DNA from: Trichoplax adhaerens
Taxonomy: Eukaryota; Animalia; Placozoa
Reading direction: 5' to 3'
Length of the DNA stretch: 64,000 bases
Assembly: GCF_000150275.1 (NCBI RefSeq)
Contig: NW_002060950.1
Coordinates: 2,966,596 to 3,030,595, forward strand
Made by a program: the position numbers and the translations under genes. Under the pieces are notes generated by a model. It was not told the origin of the DNA, did no database searches, and saw only the letters and a list, made by a program, of their open reading frames with translations. Within the stretch, counting starts at the first letter, position 1. Every line of letters begins with the position of its first letter. Shown here piece by piece: positions 3,001 through 48,600 of this stretch.

Positions 3001-4977
3001 ATTAAAGATTGCTTAAAAAAAGCTGATAATGAATCCATGCAATCAATAGCCATACCTATCATCGGCACCGGAAGTATTAATTTAAATATCGATGAAGTTA
3101 CCAAGGAAATGATAAAAGTAGCAATAGACTTTGCTCATAAGCATACAGGAAGCCTACGAGAAATCTATTCTATCGTCTTTCCTACTGACTTAAACGTTTA
3201 TAGTGCTATGAAGCAATCGCTAGAATCGAGTAAAGTACTAGAAGTGCAACTTAAACAGCAAGCTGAACTCGTTAAGAAGTTAACAAAATCGACCGGAAAT
3301 ACCCCTACGCATGTAAATCTTAGTGGTACAAAGAAGCTATTATTTTCAGCTCGATGCGAAGTCACTGAAACACCTATTTGTATTAATATTTATGATGGCA
3401 ATATTCATGATGTAGCTGCAGATGCTATCGTTGATATAACATCTTTATGCCCTAAGCATTCGAAAATTGATTCTCATTTAGACTTTATTCACTATAACGA
3501 TGCTGAGCATACATCACAAACTTTGCGAAAACTCTCTTCTAAATCGTGTTCAAGTATATATCAAGTTTGTCCTTACGGTTGCTTATCTGGCTTTAGTACT
3601 ATATTAGCAATCATTAATGCCCGTGAAGAAAAATCGATCGCGATTCCGTTGTTAAGTCATGAAATGGATTTCACTCATGTTTATAGCTTAATAGATACTA
3701 TAGAGATATTTATAGCTAATAATCTAAGTGCGAGCAACGTATCTAAATTGTTTTAATTTTGTCATTGGATATAAAGATCGAAGTCGAGAATTCGCAAGCT
3801 GGATGCAAATTGTAATCGTCGATAAGCCTTTACAGTTTGGGTGGCAAATTACTCAACACGTAGCAGTTAAAGAACTTGGTTTTAATGTAACTTATGTCGC
3901 TAAAGATAAATCTATCATTACTAAGATGGAATCAGAAATGGAAGAACTTACAGATGCTTGGAAGTGTCATAAGTTGACAGAAGAAGATTATTTTGATTCA
4001 GTAGATGAAAGTAGTTGGTCTGAGCTTGCGTTACAATTTTGGTCAGAATATAACACAATGTTAGTAAGGCAAGATCAAGATAAACTTGTATGCATACATG
4101 GGTTCGAGAACGATATACTGAATGCTGTTTCAAGTATTCATAAGCTAAGTAAAACTTACTTTGAAGAGAAAGCTCAGAATGAAGTAGAGAAAGTTATAGC
4201 CGAAACAGCTAAATGGTATGTCGAAGTTGAAAAATCTAAGGTTTACTTTGAAGTAAAGCTAAATTACGAAATCGAAAAAAGCTATAAGATTTACTGTAGA
4301 GATAAGACGATGAAGATTTTTCAAGTCGATGCAGGAAATAGAACGATCGATTTTGGCCAAATGAAGGTCAGGGATACTGACGCAAAAGAGTATCCCATAG
4401 GGAAATTATCCGCAGAAGGTGTGCAAGAAAATGATATCTCGTCAGAGATCACATACGTACAATTATGAATTTTATAATTCTTAATTGCTTTACTAGATCG
4501 AATATAGGGTATAAATGGTTTTTCTTTGTTTTTTATTTAAAAATTCGAAACTGGTAGCATATCTATCAATTATAGTTTGATAAATATATTTATTAATTGT
4601 TTGAATTTTATAATAACTAAAGATCGAATACAGGGTATAGAAAAGTTTTGATCTAGTTCTATGTCGGATTTCGAAACTAGCAGCATATCTAATTTTTATA
4701 GCTTGATAATTACTTGATAACGAAAGCCTTCAGTTATTGTCCAAAGCGACCTTAGTTTAGTCTTACGATGGCATTATAATAATACTCATGGCTTGTTTTT
4801 GTTTATTAGCATTTGCTATACCTCCTAGCTGGGAATACGAAAATCAAGACGAAATTAAAGATGGTTACTTTCACATAGCCGATGTTAAAAATCAAGAGGA
4901 AATAAATGAGATATCTAGCGTTCCGGGATTGAGCGGATTGAATGTTAAAAGGCTACAAAGAATTCAGAATTGGAATT
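100..4977 (+). CDS. PARP14-like: Macro-PARP paralog 1 (PARP14-like), 5' end outside window, 1-bp frameshift at ~3733, runs into N gap within first ART exon
   Basis: Exons 100-170, 494-1909, 2273-2486, 2594-2809, 2986-4418, 4810->4977, all GT/AG and phase-compatible. Contains RRM2 (VQVSYLTESDAIIAFICLDQFEICTGQPIIVQF), macrodomain motifs ADVIVSS..GRIAGALSAAGG and SIAIPIIGTG, WWE-like KWYV..LNYEIEKSY..IDFGQM, and ART start IPPSW..RLQRIQNWN. Has an extra A at 3733 relative to paralog 2. Confidence 0.88.
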
Positions 4978-36040: not shown

Positions 36041-37737
36041 TTATAAGAGTCAATCCTACAAGCAGTGCTGAAAATTGATAATTCTTTTAGCGTAGTTAGA
36101 TTGAAAGAATAGAAAGCATATAAACAAGTGCATTAAGCACCGAGAATAATGAATATCTATGGAAAAGAATTGAATTCAATTCAGACAATTAAGAGGAGGA
36201 TCTTGGTCAGCTTTTGTTTGAATAAGGAAGTGTTCCCTGCTTGATGGAGCTAACAGTATGTTTTGCATATTTATAGCATAAAAAGCATTTATTACTCTTA
36301 ATTATATTGTATTGTGGAATAAATTATTATCATTGATTAATGAGCGCCATGAATACTGTGTAATACTATTGTTAAGAAATACAGTAGCCTTTTAGAAATT
36401 AAAGAATAACAAGTATGCGGAAGTGTCGATAAGACGATTTATGTACATGGAGTGCTCCGATTGCCTTTAATGAGTAAAATGTCAAGCCTCCATTACGATA
36501 ATCATCGACGCTATCTATTTAAATTCTACCATCATGAATTCGCGTCTATAGCTATATTCTCTTATGTTCAGGCAGAGAGGCTGGCTAGCGCATAGTAAAG
36601 ATAATGACGATAATCAACATTATCAATCGGAATTTTACAATTATAATTTCTCATCTACGTCAATTAACTTTTATGTCTGAGCAATAGATTGATTAATTTG
36701 TAGAAAAATACACTTGTATATCGTGCAGTATGTTCTTGAACCATTGCAGCAACATACTAATGATGTTGTATAAGATTAAGAAAACGAATAGAAAGCAAAT
36801 GATATATACAGACATAGGAGATACTTGATTGTTAATACGTCGATCTTAGTAATCTAGAGCCGAATAGTAAAGAGGCATAATGAACATGTATAAAATAAAT
36901 AAGAACGAGATTTTCGGACAGCTTATTATACAGTGTTTTAGTCTAAACAAGGAACGTCTGAAAGCGGTGCATAGCCTCGTGATCGAATTATTATTATACT
37001 CTACTCATTTCGTCAATAGTCCACAGCGTAAACGTGATATCCTAAAAGTAAGACAGAAGGAATGCATATTGCTACTAATGTCTTAGCCGTAGAAAGGTTT
37101 CTAAACCTGTGATAACGTATTTTATTTTTATTCTTGGTAGAGGATTCATCCTACTTCAGCTTTTATGTTGTTACTGTAATGGACAGAAAGATAGACATGG
37201 AATCTAGCTATTCTGCTGTGATCTAAAGTAAAGGTCATTCATTATCTTGGTGATAGAATTCTTTTGAAAAAGAACTGTATTGTAATATACTAGTGTTAAA
37301 TTTTACATATAATGCAATTCAATTATACTATTGGAGATTGTCTACAAATAACGATTAGATTCTTAGTTGCTGACTAATATTAGTAAGATTAGAATATCGT
37401 TGCATAGTCTGATGAAGTTGTGTCTGTAAGGGCATCAATTCAATTTAGAATACCGCCATTCTTAATTTAATATTGCATAAACCCGAATTGTTATTGGTAA
37501 AGAACTAAAGGATAGTCCGGTTGGTGTACGATGGGGAAACTCTGGATTGAAAGATCGATTGTGTTAAAATTTTTCTTCAATAGCAGTCTTTCAAGGCCAT
37601 CCGTGCTCCAATTTGCTGAATAATTACGTCCTCTTACTGCAAGATTGGTGTTCTTAAATTGATACCGGTCTAGCCTAGATTAGCTTAAAAATTTGCTGTT
37701 GTTACAATTTGAGAGAAAAGTTATTTCAGTCATAAAA

Positions 37738-40700
37738 ATGGGTAATGTACTTTGCTGCTTACCCTGTATTGGAAAGAAGACATTCTCAAGATTTCCTCTT
37801 TTGGCTGGGCGTAGAGACCCACAATACTATGGAGGAAATAACTTTGACGGTTATCTACCGATAGCAACCAATGTGATTGAAGATATAGTCGATACGACAA
37901 GATCAAATGAAGTATGGAATAGTGACAAAAATAATGTACAACAGGAATCCATACCCTACCGATATGACCATGAATATCTGTCCTCTTCTGAAGTTCGAAT
38001 TCAATCGCAAGAGCAAGGAACGCAGGTAAAAAACAGTTTAAAAATGGTCTATAATAGGAACTTTAAGCATAATAACGACTGCAAGTTCGTAGATCATGAA
38101 AGAGTAGGCTGTATTGCTGAAAAACGAAACCTTACGCCGAACGAATAATAATTTAGCTAAACCCTTCAAACTACCGACTATCCAATTTTTCTCAAATTAC
38201 TTCAGCTAAATTGAGCGAAGACTGCTTTAAGGGGGGGGGGGAAGTGGAAGATATCCCGATGCCTTCATGGAATTCTTTATAGTAGGTCGCAATGATATCG
38301 TACAGGAGACGATGCAGTAAGTCCAGGTACAGTTGTAGGCTACAGTACAGCACACGAAGGCCGATTACAAGTGTATAGTACAGAATACAGGCTACATTAC
38401 TAGAAAGTATAGTTTTAGATTTACGGTACGCCGACTACCGGAGATATCCTTCTACGGGTATATAACATATATATATATATATAAATACTACTATACAAGA
38501 TTTTCAACGGAATACAATTTTGATTTTTGAACGAAGGGGAGACATCGAAAATAATCAGATTGTACAATGATTCTGCAATTACAGTTTATAGTACTATAGC
38601 CTCCACTTCACCTTGTTAAAACAGTCTAGGCTAGATATTAAACAAAGTTTCAACATTTTCAGAACAATTATTATTATATATTATGGAATAATTTAAAACA
38701 AAGTTTCAACATTTTCGTGATAATTATTATTATAATGATATAATATTATTATAAATTATCATTAAACATCCAAAAAAAAATCACTGCCGATATAATATTA
38801 TTATAAATTATCTTTGAACATCCAAAAACAATCATTGTCGGTAGTTTGAAGAGTTGAGCTACAGAATTAGTAGCTCAACGTAAAGTTTTGTATTTCACCA
38901 ACATACCCTAAATTGAAGAAGATGACATTTTAAAACAGCTGCAAAATACTTCAGCTTTTGTGCTTTTTGATCTATTTTAGAGAAATTATGTTCAAGCAGT
39001 GCCGGTAGCCATTGAACAACAAAATAGTCACAATGCTCAATCTACGTCCTCGTATTCTAAAGATGAAATTCAATCTGAAGGCCATAAAATTAATGGAAGA
39101 CCAGATTCCAAATTGCAATCATCAATTCGGTCGGAAAAATTAGTAGATAGGGCTATTTCAGTATCTAAAAGTCTGGATGATGATAGCAATACGACAACTC
39201 AAGAATCGAATAATATCACTCAAGTTTCACAGCTTGGCTCCTCGTCAGAGATTGTCCAGACGATGGGAGAGAGTGAAAAAGATCTACTTAAAAGCTCAAA
39301 TGAAGTTACTTATTTGCATCCTCCTGCTCCCAAAGCCTTTATTGAAGGAGAATTTACAGAAAAAGGCGACGATTGCGATACGAAGCCGTCAATATCACTC
39401 ACTTTTACCTTAGACGACTTTGGCAAAGGTTTGAAATCAAAATCAAATGGGGTTCATGAAAATGTTATCCAAGATTTAGGATTATCAACGATTAGCTTGG
39501 ATAATACCATCAAGGATCAGAAACCAAATTCCGATAGACTTTCTAATTTAGATAGGCCTGTCTCTGAAACTGAAATTACATCGAATTTACCAGATCATGG
39601 TAGTAGAAGAGATATCATAAAATTGAGATCATCATTTTTTGACGTTGAAGATACTGTCAGAGATCCAAAACTCATAACCAAAGAAGATATTAAAAGTACT
39701 AAACTCAAATTGGCAGCTACGTTGTCAAGAGAAAGCTTAAAGCGTGAAATAGAAAATAGAGACGACATAAAATTAGGATCGTCATCATCTACTGGTCTAG
39801 ACGACACTATCAGAGATCCGAAATTGATCGCCAATGAAGATTCTGAAGGCAACAAACTCAAATTGGTAGCTCCTTTATCAAAAAAAACCTTGAAGCATGA
39901 AGTAGTAAATCAGGATACAGCTGAAGAACGGAATGACTTGACGTATATTTCCCAGCCGGCAAATAAAAAGCAGAAAGGAAAGACCGATGATAATAAACCA
40001 TCATTTTCTGACAAAGAAAGTTTAACATATTGTTCCAAGGAAAATATTCAGACAACGAACAGCAAACAAGAAATGGCACCAAAAAGAAAGCCTAATGACA
40101 TTCATAAACTGCAACCAATATCTCCAGTCTCTAGCCAGGATATCATGGATTTGAAAGGTTTATACCCTCTGAAAAGCCATAATTTCCAAAATGTAGAGGC
40201 CGAAGTGAATGATTCTCTCTCACCAATAGATTTCTCAGTGACCAAATTGAAAAGTAGACCTGTTAAAAGCGATGAGGATGTTAGAATGGAGTTATTATTC
40301 AAAGACTCATTGCATAAAACCACCAGAGCATTTGAAGAAGAATTATTACAGAAAATTTACAACGAAATGTCTGATGAAAGCCAAATATACAATGATCAAA
40401 ATCTTCAAGATTGTGGTCAGATCATTGAAAATGACCATCTATCGACCCAGAAACAGCCCCAAAGTAAATGTAATACTGACAATACTCTTGAAGACCAAAA
40501 AACTATTCCAACTCCAGCTAGGATATTACTCATTAAACAGCTTAATTCGGAAGAGAACGTAGCCAAGATTATCAATAATCCCCAAATGGATATTAGCGAC
40601 TTTGAGCGTACACTCGTTTCATGCATAAGCTGGACACGAGGCCGTCAAAAAGTTACTGTAAATATTCAATACAACCAAGATGGCATCTCGCTCTCATTAT

Positions 40701-43700
40701 CCAGTTTTCTTCGCCTATACCCACAGATTGTTCAGGACACGAATACTAAATTAAGAAATAAAAAAGTTATGGCAGGTGTACATCGTGATAGGGAGAAGAT
40801 CTCGGTTATTGCTGTCAATAAGGAAGAATATGACAAAGTCATCGACATTCTTAATACTGACATCCAAATTGACATTTATCAAATATCTTATAGCCAAGAT
40901 TTACTGAAAAATTGGATCTCGTTTTGCAACATATTAACCAATGAATTAGCTTCTCAACTTGAGGTTTTTATTCAATGTTGGTTAAATACACTAGAGAAAA
41001 CAGCTACTGCTAAAATTGTTGGCAGCAGTGAGGCATTCGAATATGTCATGCTCAAAGTCAAGAAACATCTTGACAAGTATAAAACCAATGTTTCAAATTC
41101 ATTCGATGGCGAAAATTATAATGAATTTTTAATCCAAAAATTACCTTCCGCAAAAGTTCATTACTTGAAGGAACATTGTAAAAAAGAATTTTTATCGCTT
41201 GAGGAGCAGTATCATTGTCAGTTGCTGTATCGGCCGATGGAGACAAATGGGAATAAAGATGATCATCAATTAATCCTGAAATACCCTAATGAGCATATAA
41301 CTACTGAGATTAAGGAAATTAGTGAGACAATCTCTTCCATTCCAATAATTACCGAAACACTTTCTAGCGATAGTAGTCAATTATCACGAATAACGCGGTA
41401 TATTAGCCAAAACCAAGGAAAACTAAAGAAAGTGATAGGAAATTTGCGGTATTCTCTGATTGTTTCAGATGCTAAAAGGGATCTTGTGAGGTAGTTATAC
41501 CTACGTTATTAAAAGTTTTCAGAAAATTGAAAACGAGAATGAAGTTGTCATTAATACTGACCAATTCAATATTCATTTCTTTTCAAGATTCACAAGAGAG
41601 AAAACTATCAATGTGCCAGTTAGAAATTCAAAGAATAAAAAAAGAAAATGTAAAAAATCTCAATCAATAAGTGAAGAATCGGATATAATTTATATCAACC
41701 AGGCTGGCTTATGTATAAAACTTATAAGAGGAAAGATTGAAAAGGAAGGTAGACAGGTAAGTTAAGAATAATGTTCGGATATCATAAATTACCCTCTAGG
41801 ATTGTAAATGATGGGTAAAACTGGCGATTTATTGAAAATTATCTTGCATTTATTCTTCTTAGACTGATGCCATTATTAACTTTGTTGATGTGAAAAATCC
41901 TCAAGCTGGAGCAATCGCACAGGCAATATTCAATGCTGATGGCCCAGAATACCAGTTAGAGTGTAGCAATTTTCTTAAAGATCTATCGAAAGATTCATTT
42001 CGCCGTACTGAGGGATATCGTTTTGGATGTAAAAATATCTATCATATTCCGTTTTTAAGTTCCTCTAGAACATTAACGGTAAACTAGTTAATGAATTACT
42101 TCTCTTATCAGGAAACTTCGTTCAATCGCACTAATTTATACCCTAGTTTTTATTGGACTTTTATTTTATTTAGTGGCTAGGAAATATGATCTACCAATGC
42201 CTAGAAGATGCAAATAAGGAATCGTTAAAAGCCATTTCTATACCTAGCTTGGGAGCTGGTGGTGTGGGATGGTCTGCAGATACAGTGGCTAAGGAAATGA
42301 TCGATAGCGCAATTCAATTTGCCAAAAATAATAATGGCAGACACTTAAATGTAGTTCGTTTTATTATATTTGAAGAGGATACGCCGACCTATTATAGTTA
42401 CAATAGAATATTTAAAAGGATCGCTAAAAATTTAGAAATTGGATTAAGTTTGCCTGCCTTAACTAGTGGTGATGATATAGGATTGGTAGAGCGGCTAACG
42501 AAAGTAACCACTCCTGTTAAAAAAGCGAAACAAGATCAGCTCAAAGTTCTCTTTTCTGTCATTTCTACAAATATCCATCATTTTCTATTAAATTTCTGTC
42601 ATGGCAGTATTAATGATGCTCAAACATCTGCTATTCTAAATCCAACAGCAGTTTGTTCTTGCCATTTACAGCAAGGAAAGTTAGCAGAGCGATTAGATTC
42701 ATATCCTCGATGCTACTCGGAATCGACTTTAAATACAAACAAAAAAATGGCAGCAAGTGGCAAGACTATTTATACTTTTTGCCCATATGGTATGATAGAC
42801 GATTTTCGATCATTGCTTGATTCTATCCACCAAAACGACGATCGTTCCCTCACCTATCCATTAGCAAGTACAGAAAGTAGCGAAAAGGATATTTATAAAT
42901 TATTAACTGCTATTACTGGCTTTCTTAATGATCACTCAACGGCCAAAATTTCACTGACACGTCTTGATTTTATAACGGGTAATGAAGAACTGGCGCATGA
43001 AATTGCTTGCTGGGCACAAAGACTGATTGCGCAAAAATCTGATCATGATACTTCATTGTTAACTCAATGGAAGATTACGCAATTCAATCTTTATGATGAA
43101 TATGGTAAGAAAATTACGATTATTGCTGACAGTGACGATACGATAGTGCAAGTTAAAAAAAAGTTAGTGGATAATGCATCATATTGGACATGCGAAGAAA
43201 TCACTGAACAAGATGTTGTTACAGCTACTCAAGATCCAGCATGGTTGACATTAATGAATGAATTATGGTGTCAGTTTGGTACAATAATAGTTGACAACAG
43301 TGATGATGGGAAAATTATGATTTATGGCAATAAAGATGATGTATTTCAAGTTAAGGATAGAATTCATCAGTTCGCACAAGAGAAGGATTGCCAATCTATC
43401 GTGGAAGATATGATAAATGAAATGCTAAAAAAAACTCAATGGAATGTTGCAGTGGATAAAGCAAAGCACGATTTCTCACCTGAGATGAACCGTGAAATCG
43501 AAAGAGGTTATAAAACTTATGTCAAAAATAGTAGCAAATCATCCTGTGAAATTGATGGTAAGATCATCGAATATTCCAGCATGTTAATCCAACTGGATAA
43601 ATTATTGTTTACAATAGCCCGAAAATCATTCAGTGAAGGTAAAGTATACTATGTATATATATATAACATATACTAATCTCTGTTTCAACCTTAATATAAA

Positions 43701-45616
43701 TTTAGGTGCGATCTTAGTTCTGCTACGAAATTTTTACAAATTCGAATATTATGCTTAATCTATGGTCGATAAGAGTTGAGAAATAGAATAGTAGGATTAT
43801 TATCTTAATTATTTTTTTATAAATTGATCTGCTAAAGAAGGCACTACTTATCATATACTACTGCGTAATGCATCTATTTTTGTCGAATTTGTAGATGACT
43901 TTTCATGCCTAATTAAAAATATGTCACCTATCACATTCTATTACACACTTTTGAGTAATGTATTTATTTTTGTCTAATTTGTAGATAACTTATCGTACCA
44001 GTTAAAAATATATCGCCAATCACATTCGATTGGGTTATGATATATTAGCTACCATGCTCTGTCGTATTACACTAAGTTTTGCATACGGTACATTTCTGTA
44101 TAATTTGTGGACAAATTACGTAGTTAAGATACATCGCATAAAATATCGAATTATATTGAGTAATGCATTTATTTCCGGCTAATTGGTATACAGTTTACTA
44201 AGTTAGAAATGCATCGCCTATCTTATAACATCAAGTAATTTCTATAATACATTTCTGTCTAACTCGTGAATAGCTGACCTAGTTAAAATACATCGAGTAC
44301 GTTATCAAGTTGCAAAAAAATGGTTACATTCATTCTTTATCTAGTTTGTAGACAACTTACCTAGTTAAAATGCATCGCATACTATATCATATTACATTGA
44401 GTAATACATATACATTTCTTTCTAATATTTTGTAGACAGCTTGCCGTAACTTGTTAAAAAAATTGCGTATCATGTTATATTGTATAGGGTTTATAATATT
44501 ACATTTAGTATTGCTCGTATTTCTGTCTAATTTGTAGATAATGTACTTACTCAAATATATCGTCTACATTGTAATATCACATTGAGTAATATGCACATTT
44601 CCATCTAATTTGTGGATAACTTAGCTAATTAAAATGCAACACCGGCGGTATCATTATATTGAGTAAGGCATACGTTTACGTTTAATTTGTGGATAACTTA
44701 CCGTACCTAGTTAAAAATGCACTACCTACGTCAACATGTTATATTGAACCATGTATAGATTTCTGTCTGATTTGTAGTCAGTTTACTTAATTAATTTAAA
44801 ATTTATCTTCCATGCTACTTTATTAAGTAATATACATATGTTTCCCTTTAATTTGTAGACCATTTACCCAGTAAGCAATATTGGACACTTTCCGAAAAAG
44901 AGGTTCAAGATTCAAGTCAATATCTCCTTGTTGATGTTTGGAAAGGGGGCAGAATATAATGAAATTGTGGAACTTGTACGATCGCAAGGTGCGCGTCTGC
45001 GAAGGTTGCAAAGAATTCAAAATATGAACCTCTATCAACGCTATCTATTGCGCAAAACAGAAGTGGCTGAATTAGTGCAACGGTTTAGTCCAAATAGCCC
45101 AGTTGAGAGAAGACTATATCATCGAATTGATCAATCAAGTATATCTCGTATTTGCAAGTCAGGATTTGACAGAGATTACGCTACAGCAACTGCAGGTAAG
45201 ATATCGTAGTTATCATTTATTCTGAATAAACTTAATTTATTGCTAGATACTTCTATCCAATTTTAAGCTAGATATTTTAAGCTTGATAGTGATTCATTAA
45301 ATTCAAATTTCTAACTTTCATTTTAAATATGCATGCACTAGAAACGAATTACGGTAAAGGAACTCCTTTTGAAACCAGCCTTCTTACTGCCAGCAAAGGT
45401 TGTAATATCGTGTTTATGGTTGGAGTATTAACGGGCATATATACGCTAAATCCGGGGAAAGGAGGGGCTATTTTGGAATTTATACCCGGCAGCTCTAACG
45501 AAAGATTCCATTCTACTGTTAATGATTTAAAAAATCCTACAACTTTTGTTACTTTTAATGATAATGCTGCTTATCCAGAATACATTTTACATTTAGAACC
45601 AACAAATTCTACTTAA
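37738..45616 (+). CDS. Macro-PARP paralog 4: RRM-less, N-terminal acylation motif, predicted catalytically inactive ART domain; +1 frameshift or alternative acceptor at the first ART exon
   Basis: Exons 37738-38025 (aaaaATGG, MGNVLCCLPC), 38981-41490, 41588-41756, 41863-42078, 42174-43638, 44859 (or 44872)-45195, 45342-45616. Same 216-nt macro exon and downstream intron positions as the other copies. ART motifs read ERRLYHRID, YGKGTPFE and PTTFVTFNDNAAYPEY. Confidence 0.85.
39609..39915 (+). repeat. Coding tandem repeat, 2 x 150 bp (50 aa), plus a weaker earlier partial copy
   Basis: DIIKLRSS..DTVRDPKLITKED..KLKLAATLS / DDIKLGSS..DTIRDPKLIANED..KLKLVAPLS. Confidence 0.85.
43860..44880 (+). 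repeat. Intronic minisatellite (~12 degenerate units of ~70-100 bp) ending at the ART exon acceptor of paralog 4
   Basis: Unit consensus approx gagtaat..catttctgtctaatttgtagacaacttacctagttaaaat; the last unit overlaps the real acceptor aatttgtag|accatttacccagt. Confidence 0.85.
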
Positions 45617-48600
45617 ATCGTCGATACAATGATAAATTCTGAATAAAATATTTTTATTTAGCCTACTAGATCTGTATTATAGAAGGGAGTATCATGATTT
45701 GTTGAATGTCATATGGTACTCCATAATCCTTTATGCTTTATTGTACTGTAAGCATAATTTACTGAAACAGTAGTAGATAGACTTATTCATTTTGTTCCGA
45801 ATCAACTTAATTTATGAATAATGTCAGAAAGTTATTCTTGTAAAGCAAACTCATTCCTGATTTAAAGTTTAGAATAGAAGGATGTTGTACAGACTTTCTC
45901 CTTACGATAGTTTTGAGGAGGATAAATTTATAGTAAATGCCATTAATCTGTTAAATAAAGCTTTCTATTAATGTTAGATATGTTGTTTTTGTAAAGCTTA
46001 GAAAGCATTTATGATAATAAAGGAATTTATTAAAACTTCTAATTGCACCAATGCGAAATGCTAATTTATGTACTTTTATTCGTCTCCATCATATATAAGT
46101 ACAGTTTGGCATACCTTTGTGAAGGAAATTCTGTAATAAATCATAAACTAGAAAGTTGTAAGGCTTAAGATATGAACAATATGCATAATTCTTGATAAAA
46201 TGAACAAATTTGTAAAGTTACACTGAAATATCAATATTTGAATCTGTAAAAGAGAAGATTTGCATAAATTAATCGGTTTATGTAAGGACGTGCAAGAGAG
46301 AATAACCAAATAAAATTGCTACTTCTGCGAGTTATAACAGCAGCCAGCATACAGCTTACTGTCAAGAGGTTAAGTATTATGTTAAAGAAATTTAGAAAAA
46401 CTGCTTTACGACTGATGTTGTTTCTTGTCTATATATTTTCTTTTATAGGATAAAATCAAATTTAAGTCATATTTTATTCATCTTAAGTTTCTAAGACAAG
46501 AATACGTTGTTTGATGCATGAAACGTTTGAGTTTCAAATACGTTTTAAAGCAGATGTTATGAACTATTGCTATACTTTCAGTTTTGACTAATTTTACTGA
46601 ACAAGAGGATTCTTGTGATACTAGTATGACATAAGATTGGTAAAGTGCTTATCTTAATTTCTGCTATGAGATACCTTAGTTATTGATTACATACGGTGTG
46701 TTTACTAGTTTTCAAACATTTAAATGGCAAAGTATATGGTAATTATTGCTACGTGCTTTGATTGCTCTTACACGGACAATTGTAGCTATATGTTGGTATG
46801 AAGAATCGTATTTTTAGGTTAGTTTTAAGCCATAATTTCCCCCTTTTTCTACATTTGAAAACAAAATAAAGATTCTTCACATCTATTGGTTCTGATAGAA
46901 ATTAATTTATAGTAATGGCTTTGAATTATAAAAAACAGAAAGGTCTGAGAGCTAGATCAATCATTTCCTAATGCTTGAACCTCTTTCTGATATACGACAA
47001 CGTCATCAAAAACGATAGTGGCCACCCTATTTCCTAGAGCAAATTTATTGGCTATCATATTAACATAAAAACCTCAAAAACAGATACACTTTTTGAGTTA
47101 TTATTCCATCAATACTATTCAGGCGCTAATGGGTTAATGTTACCGATAATATATGTCCATGCATTGATATATGCTTATTACAGGCTGTATAATATTACAT
47201 TGTTTTATTGTAGGTAGAGTTTTTCTGGATTAACTAGGTCAATATGTAAAAGTTCTGTTCGCTTGACCTGTCTGACATCTATAATAATGTTCCACTAATG
47301 TTCGGTTGCAGCTTGATCAGCTAACTGATCGTTCAAATATTTTTCTAAATATTGCAGTCGACTTTCTTATTTTTATGACAATTCAAGTGCTTAACATGTT
47401 GCAATATTGCTCCAATAGATTAGAGGTAATTTTATTCCTCTTGATAGCTGCTGTAGACAGTGAATAACAGTCGATAATTAAAATAGTTTGCTTTGTCCGA
47501 TCATGATATTAAAATAACTTAGTTAAGATTTGATATTTAATAGTATTATGCTGTCTCAGTAAAATAGCTGATCGACGCGATCGAATCTAGTTTAAAAGTA
47601 AATAGTTCAGCATTACCCCGCATGATTTTACTGTGCTTTAGTTACGACAGCAAAGTTCGTTATTTAGTAGTTGCTTTACACTGTTTTGTATATTCAATTA
47701 TCGGAACGATCAAATTAATACATTTAAATTCAACGATTACTTGTATCCATAAGCGAGGATGAGATGCAATATTTAGGTAGGAATAGTAGCAATTAAGCTT
47801 GCTCCTTGACTGCTGAAAAAATATTGTAAAATATACTCGTTTATTACTCATTTGCGAAATAATATGTCGTAAGGATAAAGTTTAATAATAGGAAAATTAT
47901 TCATATATGACATCAGCAGCATATTCTTCAATCTCTGCTTTCAATCATAAAGCAGTTCAAAGTGAGGCAAAAGTTACTCAAAGGGGATAAAACAAATATA
48001 ATAATAAGCGGTTATTGACTCAAAATTCCTTCTTAACTGTTTGATGATTACTTTCGTAAATTATAATGAGAGTATAGAATACTACAATTGATAATTTTAT
48101 TGTTATTATAATTAATAAAATATTATTGTTGGTGAATTAGATGACTGAGAGTGAAGGAGTAGCTTATTAATTCTATTTTACCATCTCTAGAGAAATGAAA
48201 TTATTTAGACGGCTATTTTGAAGTGAACCTTTTCGCAAGGATTACTATTCTAATTTAATGACTAGGTCAAATTTTTGGCTGAAAACTCATCGTTGCAGCA
48301 ACTGAGCATAACGTCATTCGTATTTCCATTTAGAACTTTAGTAATTCAATTTCAAGTCTTCTATACATATCTATTTTCTGTATTTTATACTTTACTTTGT
48401 ATTTTTGATGTAAAATTTTACGTAAAGATAGTAATTCCAAGGTAATGACTAGTCTAATTTGGGATACAATTTCCTAGAATTTTAGGGTTTATGCTATTTT
48501 TCAGATATTATTATACCTGAATATTGCTGTACGGTTTACTTAAAATAGGCATTGAAGTTTCGTGAATGCTAAAGTCTGGATTGAGTAAACGGGAATATAT

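What the first reader, a model, noticed from the sequence alone, without database searches (positions are those of the whole stretch)
37738..45616. Membrane-anchored pseudo-PARP: N-terminal dual-acylation motif replaces the RRMs and the ART site is dead
Seen: copy 4 has none of the six RRM micro-exons. Its first exon starts aaaaATGG and encodes MGNVLCCLPCIGKKTFSR (Gly2, Cys6/7/10, basic patch), splicing in phase 0 into a long low-complexity exon. Its ART domain keeps the structural motifs (RLQRIQNxNLYQRY, ICxxGFDRDY, VLTG, AYPEYI) but changes the NAD+-binding ones: FHGT to YHRID, GTYFA to GTPFE, third triad residue Thr. Established: MG-x-x-x-C/S with nearby Cys is an N-myristoylation plus S-palmitoylation signal; PARP13/ZAP-L is an inactive PARP targeted to membranes by C-terminal prenylation, and PARP9 is an inactive partner clustered with PARP14. 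Inference: an independently evolved lipid-anchored pseudo-enzyme acting as sensor, decoy or adaptor for its active neighbours. I am not aware of an N-myristoylated macro-PARP.
Basis: partly seen in the sequence, partly recalled or inferred. Interest (0 to 1): 0.9.

Follow-up and report, generated by a model that had tools for sequence, protein, structure and literature searches.

The report
Lipid-motif macro-PARP with dead catalytic pocket
One gene in a Trichoplax cluster of PARP14-like immune-type enzymes is intact, transcribed and under selection. Its protein starts with a fatty-acid attachment signal instead of RNA-binding domains, and its enzyme pocket has lost almost all NAD+-holding residues, so it is most likely a membrane-tethered, non-catalytic relative of its neighbours.

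Summary
The window is Trichoplax adhaerens. Copy 4 is the annotated gene TRIADDRAFT_64129 (RDD38023.1 "PARP14" in Trichoplax sp. H2).

- **Gene structure.** RNA contigs from two organism labels carry the last 32 nt of exon 1 joined at the exon-2 acceptor (38025|38981). They also carry every junction from exon 2 to exon 6.
- **A false alarm.** I found a 1-nt frameshift in a G-run (44945-49) inside the first ART exon. All four read sets, DNA and RNA, lack that G, so it is a reference error. The real CDS is 1752 codons and open. Both public gene models are wrong at exon 5/6.
- **A second member.** A paralog 34 kb downstream ("copy 7", about 50% identical) also starts with the motif: MGQLFCLAC versus MGNVLCCLPC. 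It also lacks RRM exons and has a non-canonical triad (Y-Y-T versus H-P-T). The two are sisters in a clade separate from the RRM-bearing copies.
- **Selection.** ART exons give dN/dS of about 0.3-0.4, the same as the macro exons, so they are not decaying.
- **Novelty.** I found no paper describing an N-myristoylated macro-PARP.

Lipidation, membrane targeting, loss of activity and any partner role remain untested. The scan had noted the array, the intron minisatellite and the macrodomains on this same window.

The parts
37681..37683 (+). In-frame TAG, 18 codons upstream of the start codon
   Evidence: Translation of the upstream frame. It blocks an N-terminal extension if the 5'UTR is contiguous here.
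37738..38025 (+). Exon 1 (coding part). ATG in an A(-3)/G(+4) context, encoding MGNVLCCLPCIGKK... (Gly2; Cys6, 7 and 10; Lys13 and 14), 96 codons, ends in phase 0.
   Evidence: Its last 32 nt are joined to exon 2 in RNA contigs X14 and X19. It is unique in the genome. Both public models start here.
38026..38980 (+). Intron 1 (955 nt, GT..AG, TA-rich repeats)
   Evidence: loose end at the acceptor.
38981..41490 (+). Exon 2. About 510 codons of Ser/Asp/Lys/Glu-rich low-complexity linker (to about 40516), then a module of about 320 aa resembling tandem KH domains.
   Evidence: ORF. RNA contig X14 covers 38979-41488 without a difference. AlphaFold model pLDDT 76; best Foldseek hits are KH1-KH2 tandems, prob 0.94-0.99 but E 1e-3 to 1e-2.
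41588..41756 (+). Exon 3 (basic linker and start of macro 1)
   Evidence: RNA joints 41490|41588 and 41756|41863 in X14 and X19.
41863..42078 (+). Exon 4 (macro 1, N-terminal half). Loop 1 reads NFVDVKNPQAGAIA.
   Evidence: Pfam Macro, 38.6 bits on the whole protein. RNA joints. Paralog alignment.
42174..43638 (+). Exon 5 (end of macro 1, a second macro fold, then a beta/alpha module of unassigned fold before the ART; paralog consensus IDF..M)
   Evidence: RNA joints 42078|42174 and 43638|44859. Foldseek to the PARP14 macro 1-2 tandem, E 1.8e-8.
43639..44858 (+). Intron 5 (1220 nt), which holds the minisatellite. It is removed as one piece.
   Evidence: Joint 'skips 1220, GT..AG' in X14 and X19. 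One lower-depth X14 contig runs unspliced over 43609-44760.
44859..45195 (+). Exon 6, the N-terminal half of the ART domain (DHLPSKQYW...RLQRIQN...ERRLYHRID...GFDRDY). His is at 45120-22. The Gly-to-Arg change is at 45123-25.
   Evidence: Acceptor 44859 confirmed by RNA. The 3' end at 45195 rests on the public models and paralog homology, not on reads.
44945..44949 (+). G5 run in the reference. The true run is G4. The extra G causes a false frameshift.
   Evidence: 'Left out 1' at 44945 in all four runs, two DNA and two RNA. The H2 assembly also has G4.
45342..45616 (+). Exon 7, the C-terminal half of the ART domain. GTPFE (Tyr to Pro at 45365-67), VLTG, third triad residue Thr at 45542-44, AYPEYI, stop at 45614-16.
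45642..45647 (+). AATAAA, 26 nt after the stop

Best explanation
Copy 4 is a functional, transcribed gene for a 1752-aa macro-PARP. Its domain order is: N-terminal SH4-type dual-acylation motif, about 600 aa of disordered linker, a tandem KH-like module, two macro folds, a linker module, and an ART fold with a rewritten nicotinamide pocket.

Proposed mechanism (all steps inferred):
1. After the initiator Met is removed, N-myristoyltransferase acylates Gly2.
2. DHHC enzymes palmitoylate Cys6, 7 and 10. The adjacent Lys-Lys helps, and the protein becomes stably tethered to a membrane.
3. The long linker lets the KH-like, macro and pseudo-ART modules reach out from the membrane. There they bind ligands or partners (nucleic acid, ADP-ribosylated proteins, other PARPs or E3 ligases) without transferring ADP-ribose themselves.

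Shown: gene structure, expression, an intact frame, the motif, conservation of the motif and of the domain fold in a sister paralog, and purifying selection.

Inferred: lipidation, membrane location, catalytic deadness, and a scaffold or reader role.
For: - **Transcription and splicing.** RNA contigs of two organism labels join exon 1 to exon 2, and show the four junctions 41490|41588, 41756|41863, 42078|42174 and 43638|44859 (checked).
- **Open frame.** With the read-supported G4 run, the CDS is 5259 nt with no internal stop.
- **Motif.** G-N-V-L-C-C fits the PROSITE N-myristoylation pattern G-{EDRKHPFYW}-x(2)-[STAGCN]-{P}. Three of the seven Cys in the first 608 residues lie in the first 10. 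There is no TM-like segment.
- **Sister paralog.** Copy 7 (G000:C1407:3039200-3044881) starts MGQLFCLAC. An in-frame TAA lies two codons upstream, and the start is contiguous with the long exon.
- **Phylogeny.** Copy 4 and copy 7 are sisters (SH-aLRT 99). With a third relative they form a clade (100) apart from the RRM-bearing copies.
- **Selection.** dN/dS between copy 4 and copy 7 is 0.29 and 0.39 for ART exons 6 and 7, against 0.29-0.38 for the KH-like and macro exons.
- **Pocket.** Aligned to the PARP15 catalytic domain (E 1.7e-15), His is kept, Gly becomes Arg, the triad Tyr becomes Pro, and the third residue is Thr. Against neighbours with H-Y-M/L/V, the S-x-x-Y helix is also lost.
- **Pfam.** PARP scores 20 bits, below the 26.7 cut-off. 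Macro passes at 38.6.
Against: - No experiment or predictor of lipidation was available.
The X14 contig carries about 389 nt upstream of the ATG, of unknown structure. An acceptor-like gttatttcag|tc at 37720-29 could in principle bring in an upstream coding exon.
- If the UTR is contiguous, it holds upstream ATGs at 37412 and 37531.
- No ortholog outside Trichoplax H1/H2 was found, so motif conservation rests on one paralog pair.
- Polymorphism within copy 4 is 12 non-synonymous to 7 synonymous events (pN/pS about 0.5), which is only mild constraint.
- dS is about 1, near saturation for the simple Nei-Gojobori estimate.
- The H2 assembly carries a 4-nt duplication in exon 5. If real in some allele, it truncates the protein.
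- His of the triad is retained, so some nucleotide binding cannot be excluded.
Confidence: 0.55

Rival explanations
1. The protein is made but is not lipid-anchored. The MG-Cys start is not used by NMT or DHHC enzymes, or translation starts elsewhere, and the protein is a soluble non-catalytic macro-PARP.
For: No direct test of acylation was possible. Cys rather than Ser/Thr at position 6 is a tolerated but not optimal NMT residue (my own knowledge). The 5'UTR structure is unresolved, and upstream ATGs are possible.
Against: Both sister paralogs keep M-G-[NQ]-[VL]-[LF]-C plus a further Cys. The rest of the first ~100 residues aligns at only 24%, and the low-complexity region after them at 29%. 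Copy 7's start is fixed by a stop two codons upstream. There are three in-frame stops within 150 nt upstream of copy 4's ATG. Both public models start at this ATG.
Confidence: 0.22
2. The ART domain still binds NAD+ or transfers ADP-ribose in a non-canonical way, so the protein is a membrane-bound enzyme and not a pseudo-enzyme.
For: The triad His is kept. The fold is conserved and under selection. The third relative also has H-R but keeps Tyr, so Gly to Arg alone may be tolerated.
Against: Four pocket positions are changed at once: Gly to Arg, triad Tyr to Pro, Ser to Ala and Tyr to Gly in the nicotinamide helix. The third position is also Thr, as in inactive PARP9, which is Q-Y-T (PARP9 inactivity as cited in PMC2964712). 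The sister copy lost a different triad residue (His to Tyr), as expected once catalysis no longer matters.
Confidence: 0.12
3. Copy 4 is a decaying pseudogene whose ART end is breaking up.
For: The reference has a frameshift in exon 6, and the H2 assembly has a different one (+4 nt) in exon 5. Both public models dodge these with an invented micro-exon. The four coding differences between the two assemblies are all non-synonymous.
Against: The extra G is absent from two DNA and two RNA read sets. The +4 is absent from the DNA and RNA contigs of the second organism label. The read-supported CDS has 1752 open codons in a 31-35% GC genome. The mRNA is correctly spliced in two labels. dN/dS is 0.3-0.4 over a dS of about 1. 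The wider variant set includes 7 synonymous changes.
Confidence: 0.04

Closest known systems
ZAP-L / PARP13.1 (human)
   Same: It is a catalytically inactive PARP-fold protein whose function depends on a lipid anchor that puts it on membranes. S-farnesylation is essential for its antiviral activity (PMC8568172). The ART domain of copy 4 also hits ZAP's in the PDB (E 9e-7).
   Different: ZAP-L's anchor is a C-terminal CaaX prenyl group, whereas here it is an N-terminal Met-Gly-x3-Cys motif. ZAP has CCCH zinc fingers and WWE domains and no macro domains. The lipidation here is only predicted.
PARP9 / BAL1 (human)
   Same: It is a macro-PARP with two macro domains and an inactive ART with Thr at the third triad position (Q-Y-T). 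It is encoded next to the active PARP14. The best PDB macro hits of copy 4 are PARP9 macro domains (E 8.6e-15).
   Different: PARP9 has no lipid motif and no long disordered N-terminal region. It lost His, whereas copy 4 lost Tyr. By the tree the Trichoplax clade arose within the placozoan array, so the loss is independent.
PARP14 / PARP15 (human), and the RRM-bearing Trichoplax neighbours
   Same: The order of KH-like, macro, macro, linker and ART domains is the same. The best ART hits are PARP15 and PARP14 (E 1e-15 to 1e-13). The H2 database name is 'PARP14'.
   Different: Copy 4 has no RRM exons. Its triad is H-P-T instead of H-Y-L, M or V. Pfam PARP falls below threshold.
SH4-type dually acylated proteins (Src-family kinases such as Fyn, G-alpha-i/o, AKAP18-alpha)
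   Same: They start Met-Gly, have a small residue at position 6, and have Cys within the first 10 residues, followed by basic residues. From memory, AKAP18-alpha begins MGQLCC, close to copy 7's MGQLFC.
   Different: This is a resemblance of motif only. There is no homology, and acylation was not tested here. The comparison sequences are recalled and were not retrieved with a tool.
PARP16 (human)
   Same: It is a membrane-bound PARP family member.
   Different: PARP16 is tail-anchored by a C-terminal transmembrane helix and is catalytically active. Copy 4 has no TM-like segment in its first ~930 residues, the part scanned.

Membership tests
Macro-PARP (PARP9/14/15-like, clade 3 of Citarelli 2010) | [quoted passage not shown] | tested here: met
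   Pfam Macro 38.6 bits against a cut-off of 22. PDB PARP9/PARP14 macro hits at E 1e-14. A second macro fold by Foldseek at E 1.8e-8.
Macro-PARP (PARP9/14/15-like, clade 3 of Citarelli 2010) | C-terminal PARP/ART catalytic fold | tested here: met
   phmmer to the PARP15 catalytic domain at E 1.7e-15 over residues 1563-1735 of the H2 protein. Pfam PARP scores only 20 bits, below 26.7.
PARP14 proper | N-terminal RRM domains | tested here: not met
   No RRM-exon match between copy 3 and exon 2. The mRNA starts with the MG-Cys exon.
PARP14 proper | H-Y-L type triad and mono-ART activity | tested here: not met
   The triad reads H-P-T, and the Gly after His is Arg. Activity itself is not testable with these tools.
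Inactive PARP pseudo-enzymes (PARP9 and PARP13 type) | Loss of NAD+-contacting residues with the fold retained | tested here: met
   Gly to Arg, Tyr to Pro, Ser to Ala, Tyr to Gly, and Thr at position 3. The structural motifs are kept, and dN/dS is 0.29-0.39.
Inactive PARP pseudo-enzymes (PARP9 and PARP13 type) | No NAD+ binding or ADP-ribosyl transfer | not testable with these tools
   This needs the recombinant domain and NAD+ binding and auto-modification assays.
N-myristoylated plus S-palmitoylated (SH4-type) proteins | Initiator Met followed by Gly2 at the true N-terminus | tested here: met
   The first coding exon is confirmed by the RNA junction. In-frame stops lie at 37681-83 and further upstream.
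N-myristoylated plus S-palmitoylated (SH4-type) proteins | G-{EDRKHPFYW}-x(2)-[STAGCN]-{P}, plus Cys within about 10 residues | tested here: met
   GNVLCC with Cys6, 7 and 10 in copy 4. GQLFCL with Cys6 and 9 in copy 7.
N-myristoylated plus S-palmitoylated (SH4-type) proteins | Covalent myristate and palmitate, and membrane association | not testable with these tools
   No predictor or experiment was available.
Pseudogene | Frameshift or stop, neutral evolution, no proper mRNA | tested here: not met
   The reference frameshift is absent from all reads. The mRNA is spliced. dN/dS is well below 1.

The most novel reading that the evidence does not exclude
Placozoans evolved a small clade of macro-PARPs (copy 4 and copy 7). 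In this clade the RNA-binding RRM head was exchanged for an SH4-type myristoyl/palmitoyl anchor on a ~600-aa flexible tether, and the transferase pocket was disabled. The result would be membrane-resident readers or scaffolds of ADP-ribose signalling that work with the active array members. This would be a convergent, N-terminal counterpart of farnesylated ZAP-L, in an early-branching animal.
Probability: 0.4. Interest if true: 0.65.

Novelty: new variant of a known kind. Interest (0 to 1): 0.55.

Why it matters
Inactive PARPs that act through location rather than catalysis are known from vertebrates: ZAP-L on endomembranes, and PARP9 as a partner of PARP14 and DTX3L. A lipid-motif macro-PARP clade in Trichoplax would show that membrane-tethered pseudo-PARPs arose independently in an early-branching animal with no interferon system. 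It would also give a simple, testable model, because 20 residues decide localisation.

In practice, the work also shows three database problems. The Trichoplax reference has a 1-nt error here. The H2 assembly has a 4-nt duplication that the laid contigs of the second organism label lack. Both database proteins for this gene contain an invented micro-exon and, in H1, 26 out-of-frame residues at the start of the ART domain.

Tried and rejected
1. **Pseudogene reading.** I found the exon-6 frameshift and a second one, specific to the H2 assembly, in exon 5, and for a while I favoured decay. Read laying rejected it.
2. **Independent DNA through exact ORF look-ups.** I looked up the exon-7 and exon-5 ORFs in public assemblies. 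Nothing was on record.
3. **Orthologs outside Trichoplax H1/H2.** The full-library HMMER search with exon 1 found only the gene's own cluster. The word-based search with residues 600-1743 found only itself, the sister paralog and one fish protein. This says little, because other placozoan proteomes may not be in the libraries.
4. **MG-Cys start for the third clade member** (extended coordinates 107338-114104). None was found upstream, and its first exon remains unidentified.
5. **RRM remnants.** I searched for RRM remnants upstream of copy 4 and copy 7. There are none.
6. **Exon 4 alone against PDB sequences.** No hit.
7. **Foldseek on the exon-2 C-terminal module.** No match at E<=0.001, only weak tandem-KH resemblance.
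8. **Literature.** No paper links myristoylation to PARP14 or macro-PARPs, and none names TRIADDRAFT_64129.
9. **Not done.**
   - The ART domain was not folded.
Full report
**What the window is**

The window is 31-35% GC, intron-bearing DNA. It lies at G000:C1407:2966596-3030595 of a 105.6-Mb, 1414-contig genome. Earlier notes of the scan call this genome Trichoplax. I confirmed that: the protein that contains exon 1 is RDD38023.1 "PARP14" of Trichoplax sp. H2 (P0001, 1743 aa). Its cluster mate is XP_002114685.1 / TRIADDRAFT_64129 / B3S3L4 of T. adhaerens (P0002, 1760 aa). So the gene itself is already in the databases. The reading put on it is what is at stake.

The window holds five full copies, and the RRM exons of a sixth, of a PARP14-like gene, all on the + strand. 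More copies lie on either side.

**Checking the observation**

- The start codon at 37738 (cataaaaATGG) opens MGNVLCCLPCIGKKTFSR. The exon ends CAG|GTAAAA at 38025. The next exon starts after TTTTAG at 38981, in phase 0.
- All-against-all blastp of + strand reading-frame pieces finds the RRM micro-exons upstream of copies 2, 3, 5 and 6, but none between copy 3 and exon 2 of copy 4.
- A tblastn run up to E=10 gave no hit with E<=1 upstream of copy 4.

In the reference, the first ART exon is broken. The frame that matches the paralogs (DHLPSKQYW...LLVDVWKG) runs into a stop. The rest of the exon (AEYNEIVELV...RLQRIQN) is in another frame. The switch lies in a G5 run at 44945-49.

I fetched the H2 locus (L002) and aligned it.
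- H2 has G4 there, so it is in frame.
- H2 carries its own 4-nt ATTC duplication at 43572 in exon 5, which would also truncate the protein.
- Both public models avoid these breaks with a micro-exon (ADLVKIHR) taken from the intron minisatellite. The H1 model then reads 26 residues out of frame.

Two different frameshifts in two near-identical genomes looked like decay, and for a time I favoured a pseudogene.

**Reads settle it**

I laid Logan contigs of four runs on window 38970-44969:
- X14, judged RNA of the window's organism label because it holds 0.78 of the words, about the exon fraction;
- X19, declared RNA of the second label;
- X7, DNA of the first label;
- X11, DNA of the second label.

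The stretch was chosen to reach both breaks and the exon-2 acceptor within the 6000-letter limit. Results:

1. All four runs leave out one G at 44945. The reference G5 is therefore an assembly error or a private variant.
2. Neither X11 (one contig over 42617-44969, whose only gap is at 44945) nor X19 (a contig over 43063-43636, no gap) has the ATTC duplication.
3. Both RNA runs show GT..AG joints at 41490|41588, 41756|41863, 42078|42174 and 43638|44859. The whole 1220-nt minisatellite intron is removed in one step. The micro-exon of the public models is not in the mRNA.
4. Both RNA runs have a loose end in front of 38979. Its 30 letters are exactly window 37994-38023, followed by the shared AG. 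The 30-mer occurs once in the window. This confirms the 38025|38981 junction.

With one G fewer, the exons sum to 5259 nt, which is 1752 codons with no internal stop. I joined the exons only inside that script, to keep track of frame and classify variants. Whole-protein searches used the public H2 protein.

**The 5' end is the weak spot**

- The X14 contig has 675 nt ahead of the exon-2 acceptor. That is about 389 nt ahead of the ATG, and I could not see its structure.
- If the 5'UTR is contiguous, in-frame stops at 37681-83 and further up fix the ATG at 37738 as the start. Upstream ATGs at 37412 and 37531 would then be short uORFs.
- An acceptor-like gttatttcag|tc at 37720-29 means I cannot formally exclude an upstream coding exon.

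**A sister gene with the same start**

The word-based search with residues 600-1743 of P0001 found P0003, named "PARP9" in Trichoplax sp. H2 (1600 aa, 48% identical). It begins MGQLFCLACFQAPK.

Its T. adhaerens counterpart lies at G000:C1407:3039200-3044881, about 8.6 kb beyond the window end. There:
- the ATG has an in-frame TAA two codons upstream;
- the MG-Cys start is contiguous with the long low-complexity exon, so no splice has to be assumed;
- there are no RRM exons upstream.

The rest of the first ~100 residues aligns at only 24%, and the low-complexity region after them at 29%. Exon 1 did not find this protein by HMMER. Yet M1, G2 and C6 are identical and positions 3-5 are conservative. 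Both sequences fit the PROSITE myristoylation pattern, and both have further Cys by residue 10.

On a tree of the exon-5 proteins:
- copy 4 and copy 7 are sisters (SH-aLRT 99);
- a third relative joins them (100);
- the RRM-bearing copies form the other clade.

I could not find the first exon of the third relative.

**The ART domain**

phmmer against PDB sequences aligns the domain to PARP15, PARP14, PARP10, PARP12 and ZAP (E 1.7e-15 to 9e-7). In the PARP15 alignment:
- FHGTD becomes YHRID (His kept, Gly to Arg);
- GTYFA becomes GTPFE (triad Tyr to Pro);
- the Leu of PKLFVVF becomes Thr.

Triads across the array:

| Gene | His motif | Triad |
|---|---|---|
| Copy 2 | FHGT | H-Y-M |
| Copy 3 | FHGT | H-Y-L |
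| Copy 5 | FHCT | H-Y-M |
| Copy 6 | FHGT | H-Y-V |
| Copy 4 | YHRI | H-P-T |
| Copy 7 | FYGT | Y-Y-T |
| Third relative | FHRT | H-Y-V |

Copies 2, 5 and 6 also have an S-x-x-Y helix (S-x-x-F in copy 3). Copy 4 has Ala and Gly at those two positions.

So five pocket positions differ in copy 4, and the sister lost a different triad residue. This is the pattern expected once catalysis has stopped mattering. Yet the fold is kept. Nei-Gojobori dN/dS between copy 4 and copy 7 (dS about 1, so these are rough) is:
- 0.29 for ART exon 6 and 0.39 for ART exon 7;
- 0.36-0.38 for the macro exons;
- 0.29 for the KH-like module.

Variants seen across the assemblies and read sets in copy 4 are 7 synonymous and 12 non-synonymous events. 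That is mild constraint, not neutrality.

**The rest of the protein**

- The first ~608 residues are rich in Ser, Asp, Lys and Glu. The first ~930 residues hold no TM-like stretch. Three of the seven Cys among the first 608 are in the first ten.
- The next ~320 residues fold (pLDDT 76, shallow alignment) into repeated beta-alpha-alpha-beta-beta-alpha units. Their best Foldseek hits are KH1-KH2 tandems (prob 0.94-0.99, but E only 1e-3 to 1e-2).
- Pfam finds one macro domain.
- The exon-5 model adds a second macro fold (PARP14 macro 1-2 tandem, E 1.8e-8).
- Loop 1 of macro 1 reads NFVDVKNPQAG rather than a Gly-rich loop, so ADP-ribose binding is open.

**Comparison with what is known**

The protein works like a cross between two known cases. 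ZAP-L is an inactive PARP whose lipid anchor is essential (PMC8568172). PARP9 is an inactive macro-PARP encoded beside active PARP14, with Thr at the third triad position (inactivity as cited in PMC2964712).

It is a member of the macro-PARP family by domain content. It fails two defining features of PARP14 proper, the RRMs and the H-Y-L triad. The anchor type (N-terminal Met-Gly plus Cys) is that of Src-family kinases and G-alpha subunits, which I state from my own knowledge.

Searches of 8.4 million papers found nothing that links myristoylation with PARP14 or macro-PARPs, and nothing on this locus tag.

**Verdict**

- It is supported as far as sequence, reads and paralog comparison can go.
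- It is untested for lipidation, localisation, loss of activity and partner function.
- I class it as a new variant of a known kind, of moderate interest.

Noticed in passing
window 44945-44949: The T. adhaerens reference has G5 where two DNA and two RNA read sets and the H2 assembly have G4. Because of this, the RefSeq protein XP_002114685.1 reads 26 residues out of frame at the start of the ART domain.
   Followed up: yes
L002:11799-11873 (H2 assembly), equivalent to window 43572: The H2 assembly has an ATTC tandem duplication in exon 5 that would truncate the protein. The DNA (X11) and RNA (X19) contigs of the second organism label lack it. It is either an allele or an assembly error.
   Followed up: partly
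window 44272-44296: Both public gene models insert a micro-exon (ADLVKIHR) from one minisatellite unit of intron 5. The RNA contigs splice 43638 directly to 44859, so the micro-exon is an artefact of the gene predictor.
   Followed up: yes
window 41702 and 42722: Both RNA runs (two organism labels) read G>A at 41702 and A>G at 42722. Both changes are synonymous. Two DNA runs and both assemblies keep the reference letter. An expressed allele that the DNA contigs dropped is more likely than editing, but this was not resolved.
   Followed up: partly
window 38970-42627: The DNA contig of the second organism label (X11) differs at 17 places from the reference. The H2 assembly shares only two of them, and the RNA contig X19 carries yet another combination. 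At least four haplotypes of this gene circulate between the two labels.
   Followed up: partly
window 3728-3756: Copy 1's large exon is split over two overlapping reading frames (ORFs 3037-3756 and 3728-4468). Copies 2, 3 and 5 have a single ORF there. This may be another reference indel or a truly broken copy.
   Followed up: no
G000:C1407:3073933-3080699 (extended coordinates 107338-114104): A third member of the copy 4 / copy 7 clade has FHRTN, GTYFA and Val (H-Y-V, with Gly to Arg as in copy 4). Its long exon begins at an acceptor. I could not find its first exon, and there is no MG-Cys start nearby.
   Followed up: partly
window 39600-39900: Two tandem units of about 57 aa lie in the low-complexity linker. 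Each unit reads, approximately, RDDI-KL-SS...D-T-RDPKLI..ED....KLKL...LS...LK-E.
   Followed up: no
window 37412 and 37531: If the 5'UTR is contiguous, it holds two upstream ATGs. One opens a 30-codon uORF (MGKLWIERS...) in the same frame as the main ORF, closed by TAA.
   Followed up: no
window 43609-44760: One X14 RNA contig of lower word depth (7.7 against 38-45) runs unspliced through most of intron 5. This is likely pre-mRNA or intron retention across the minisatellite.
   Followed up: no
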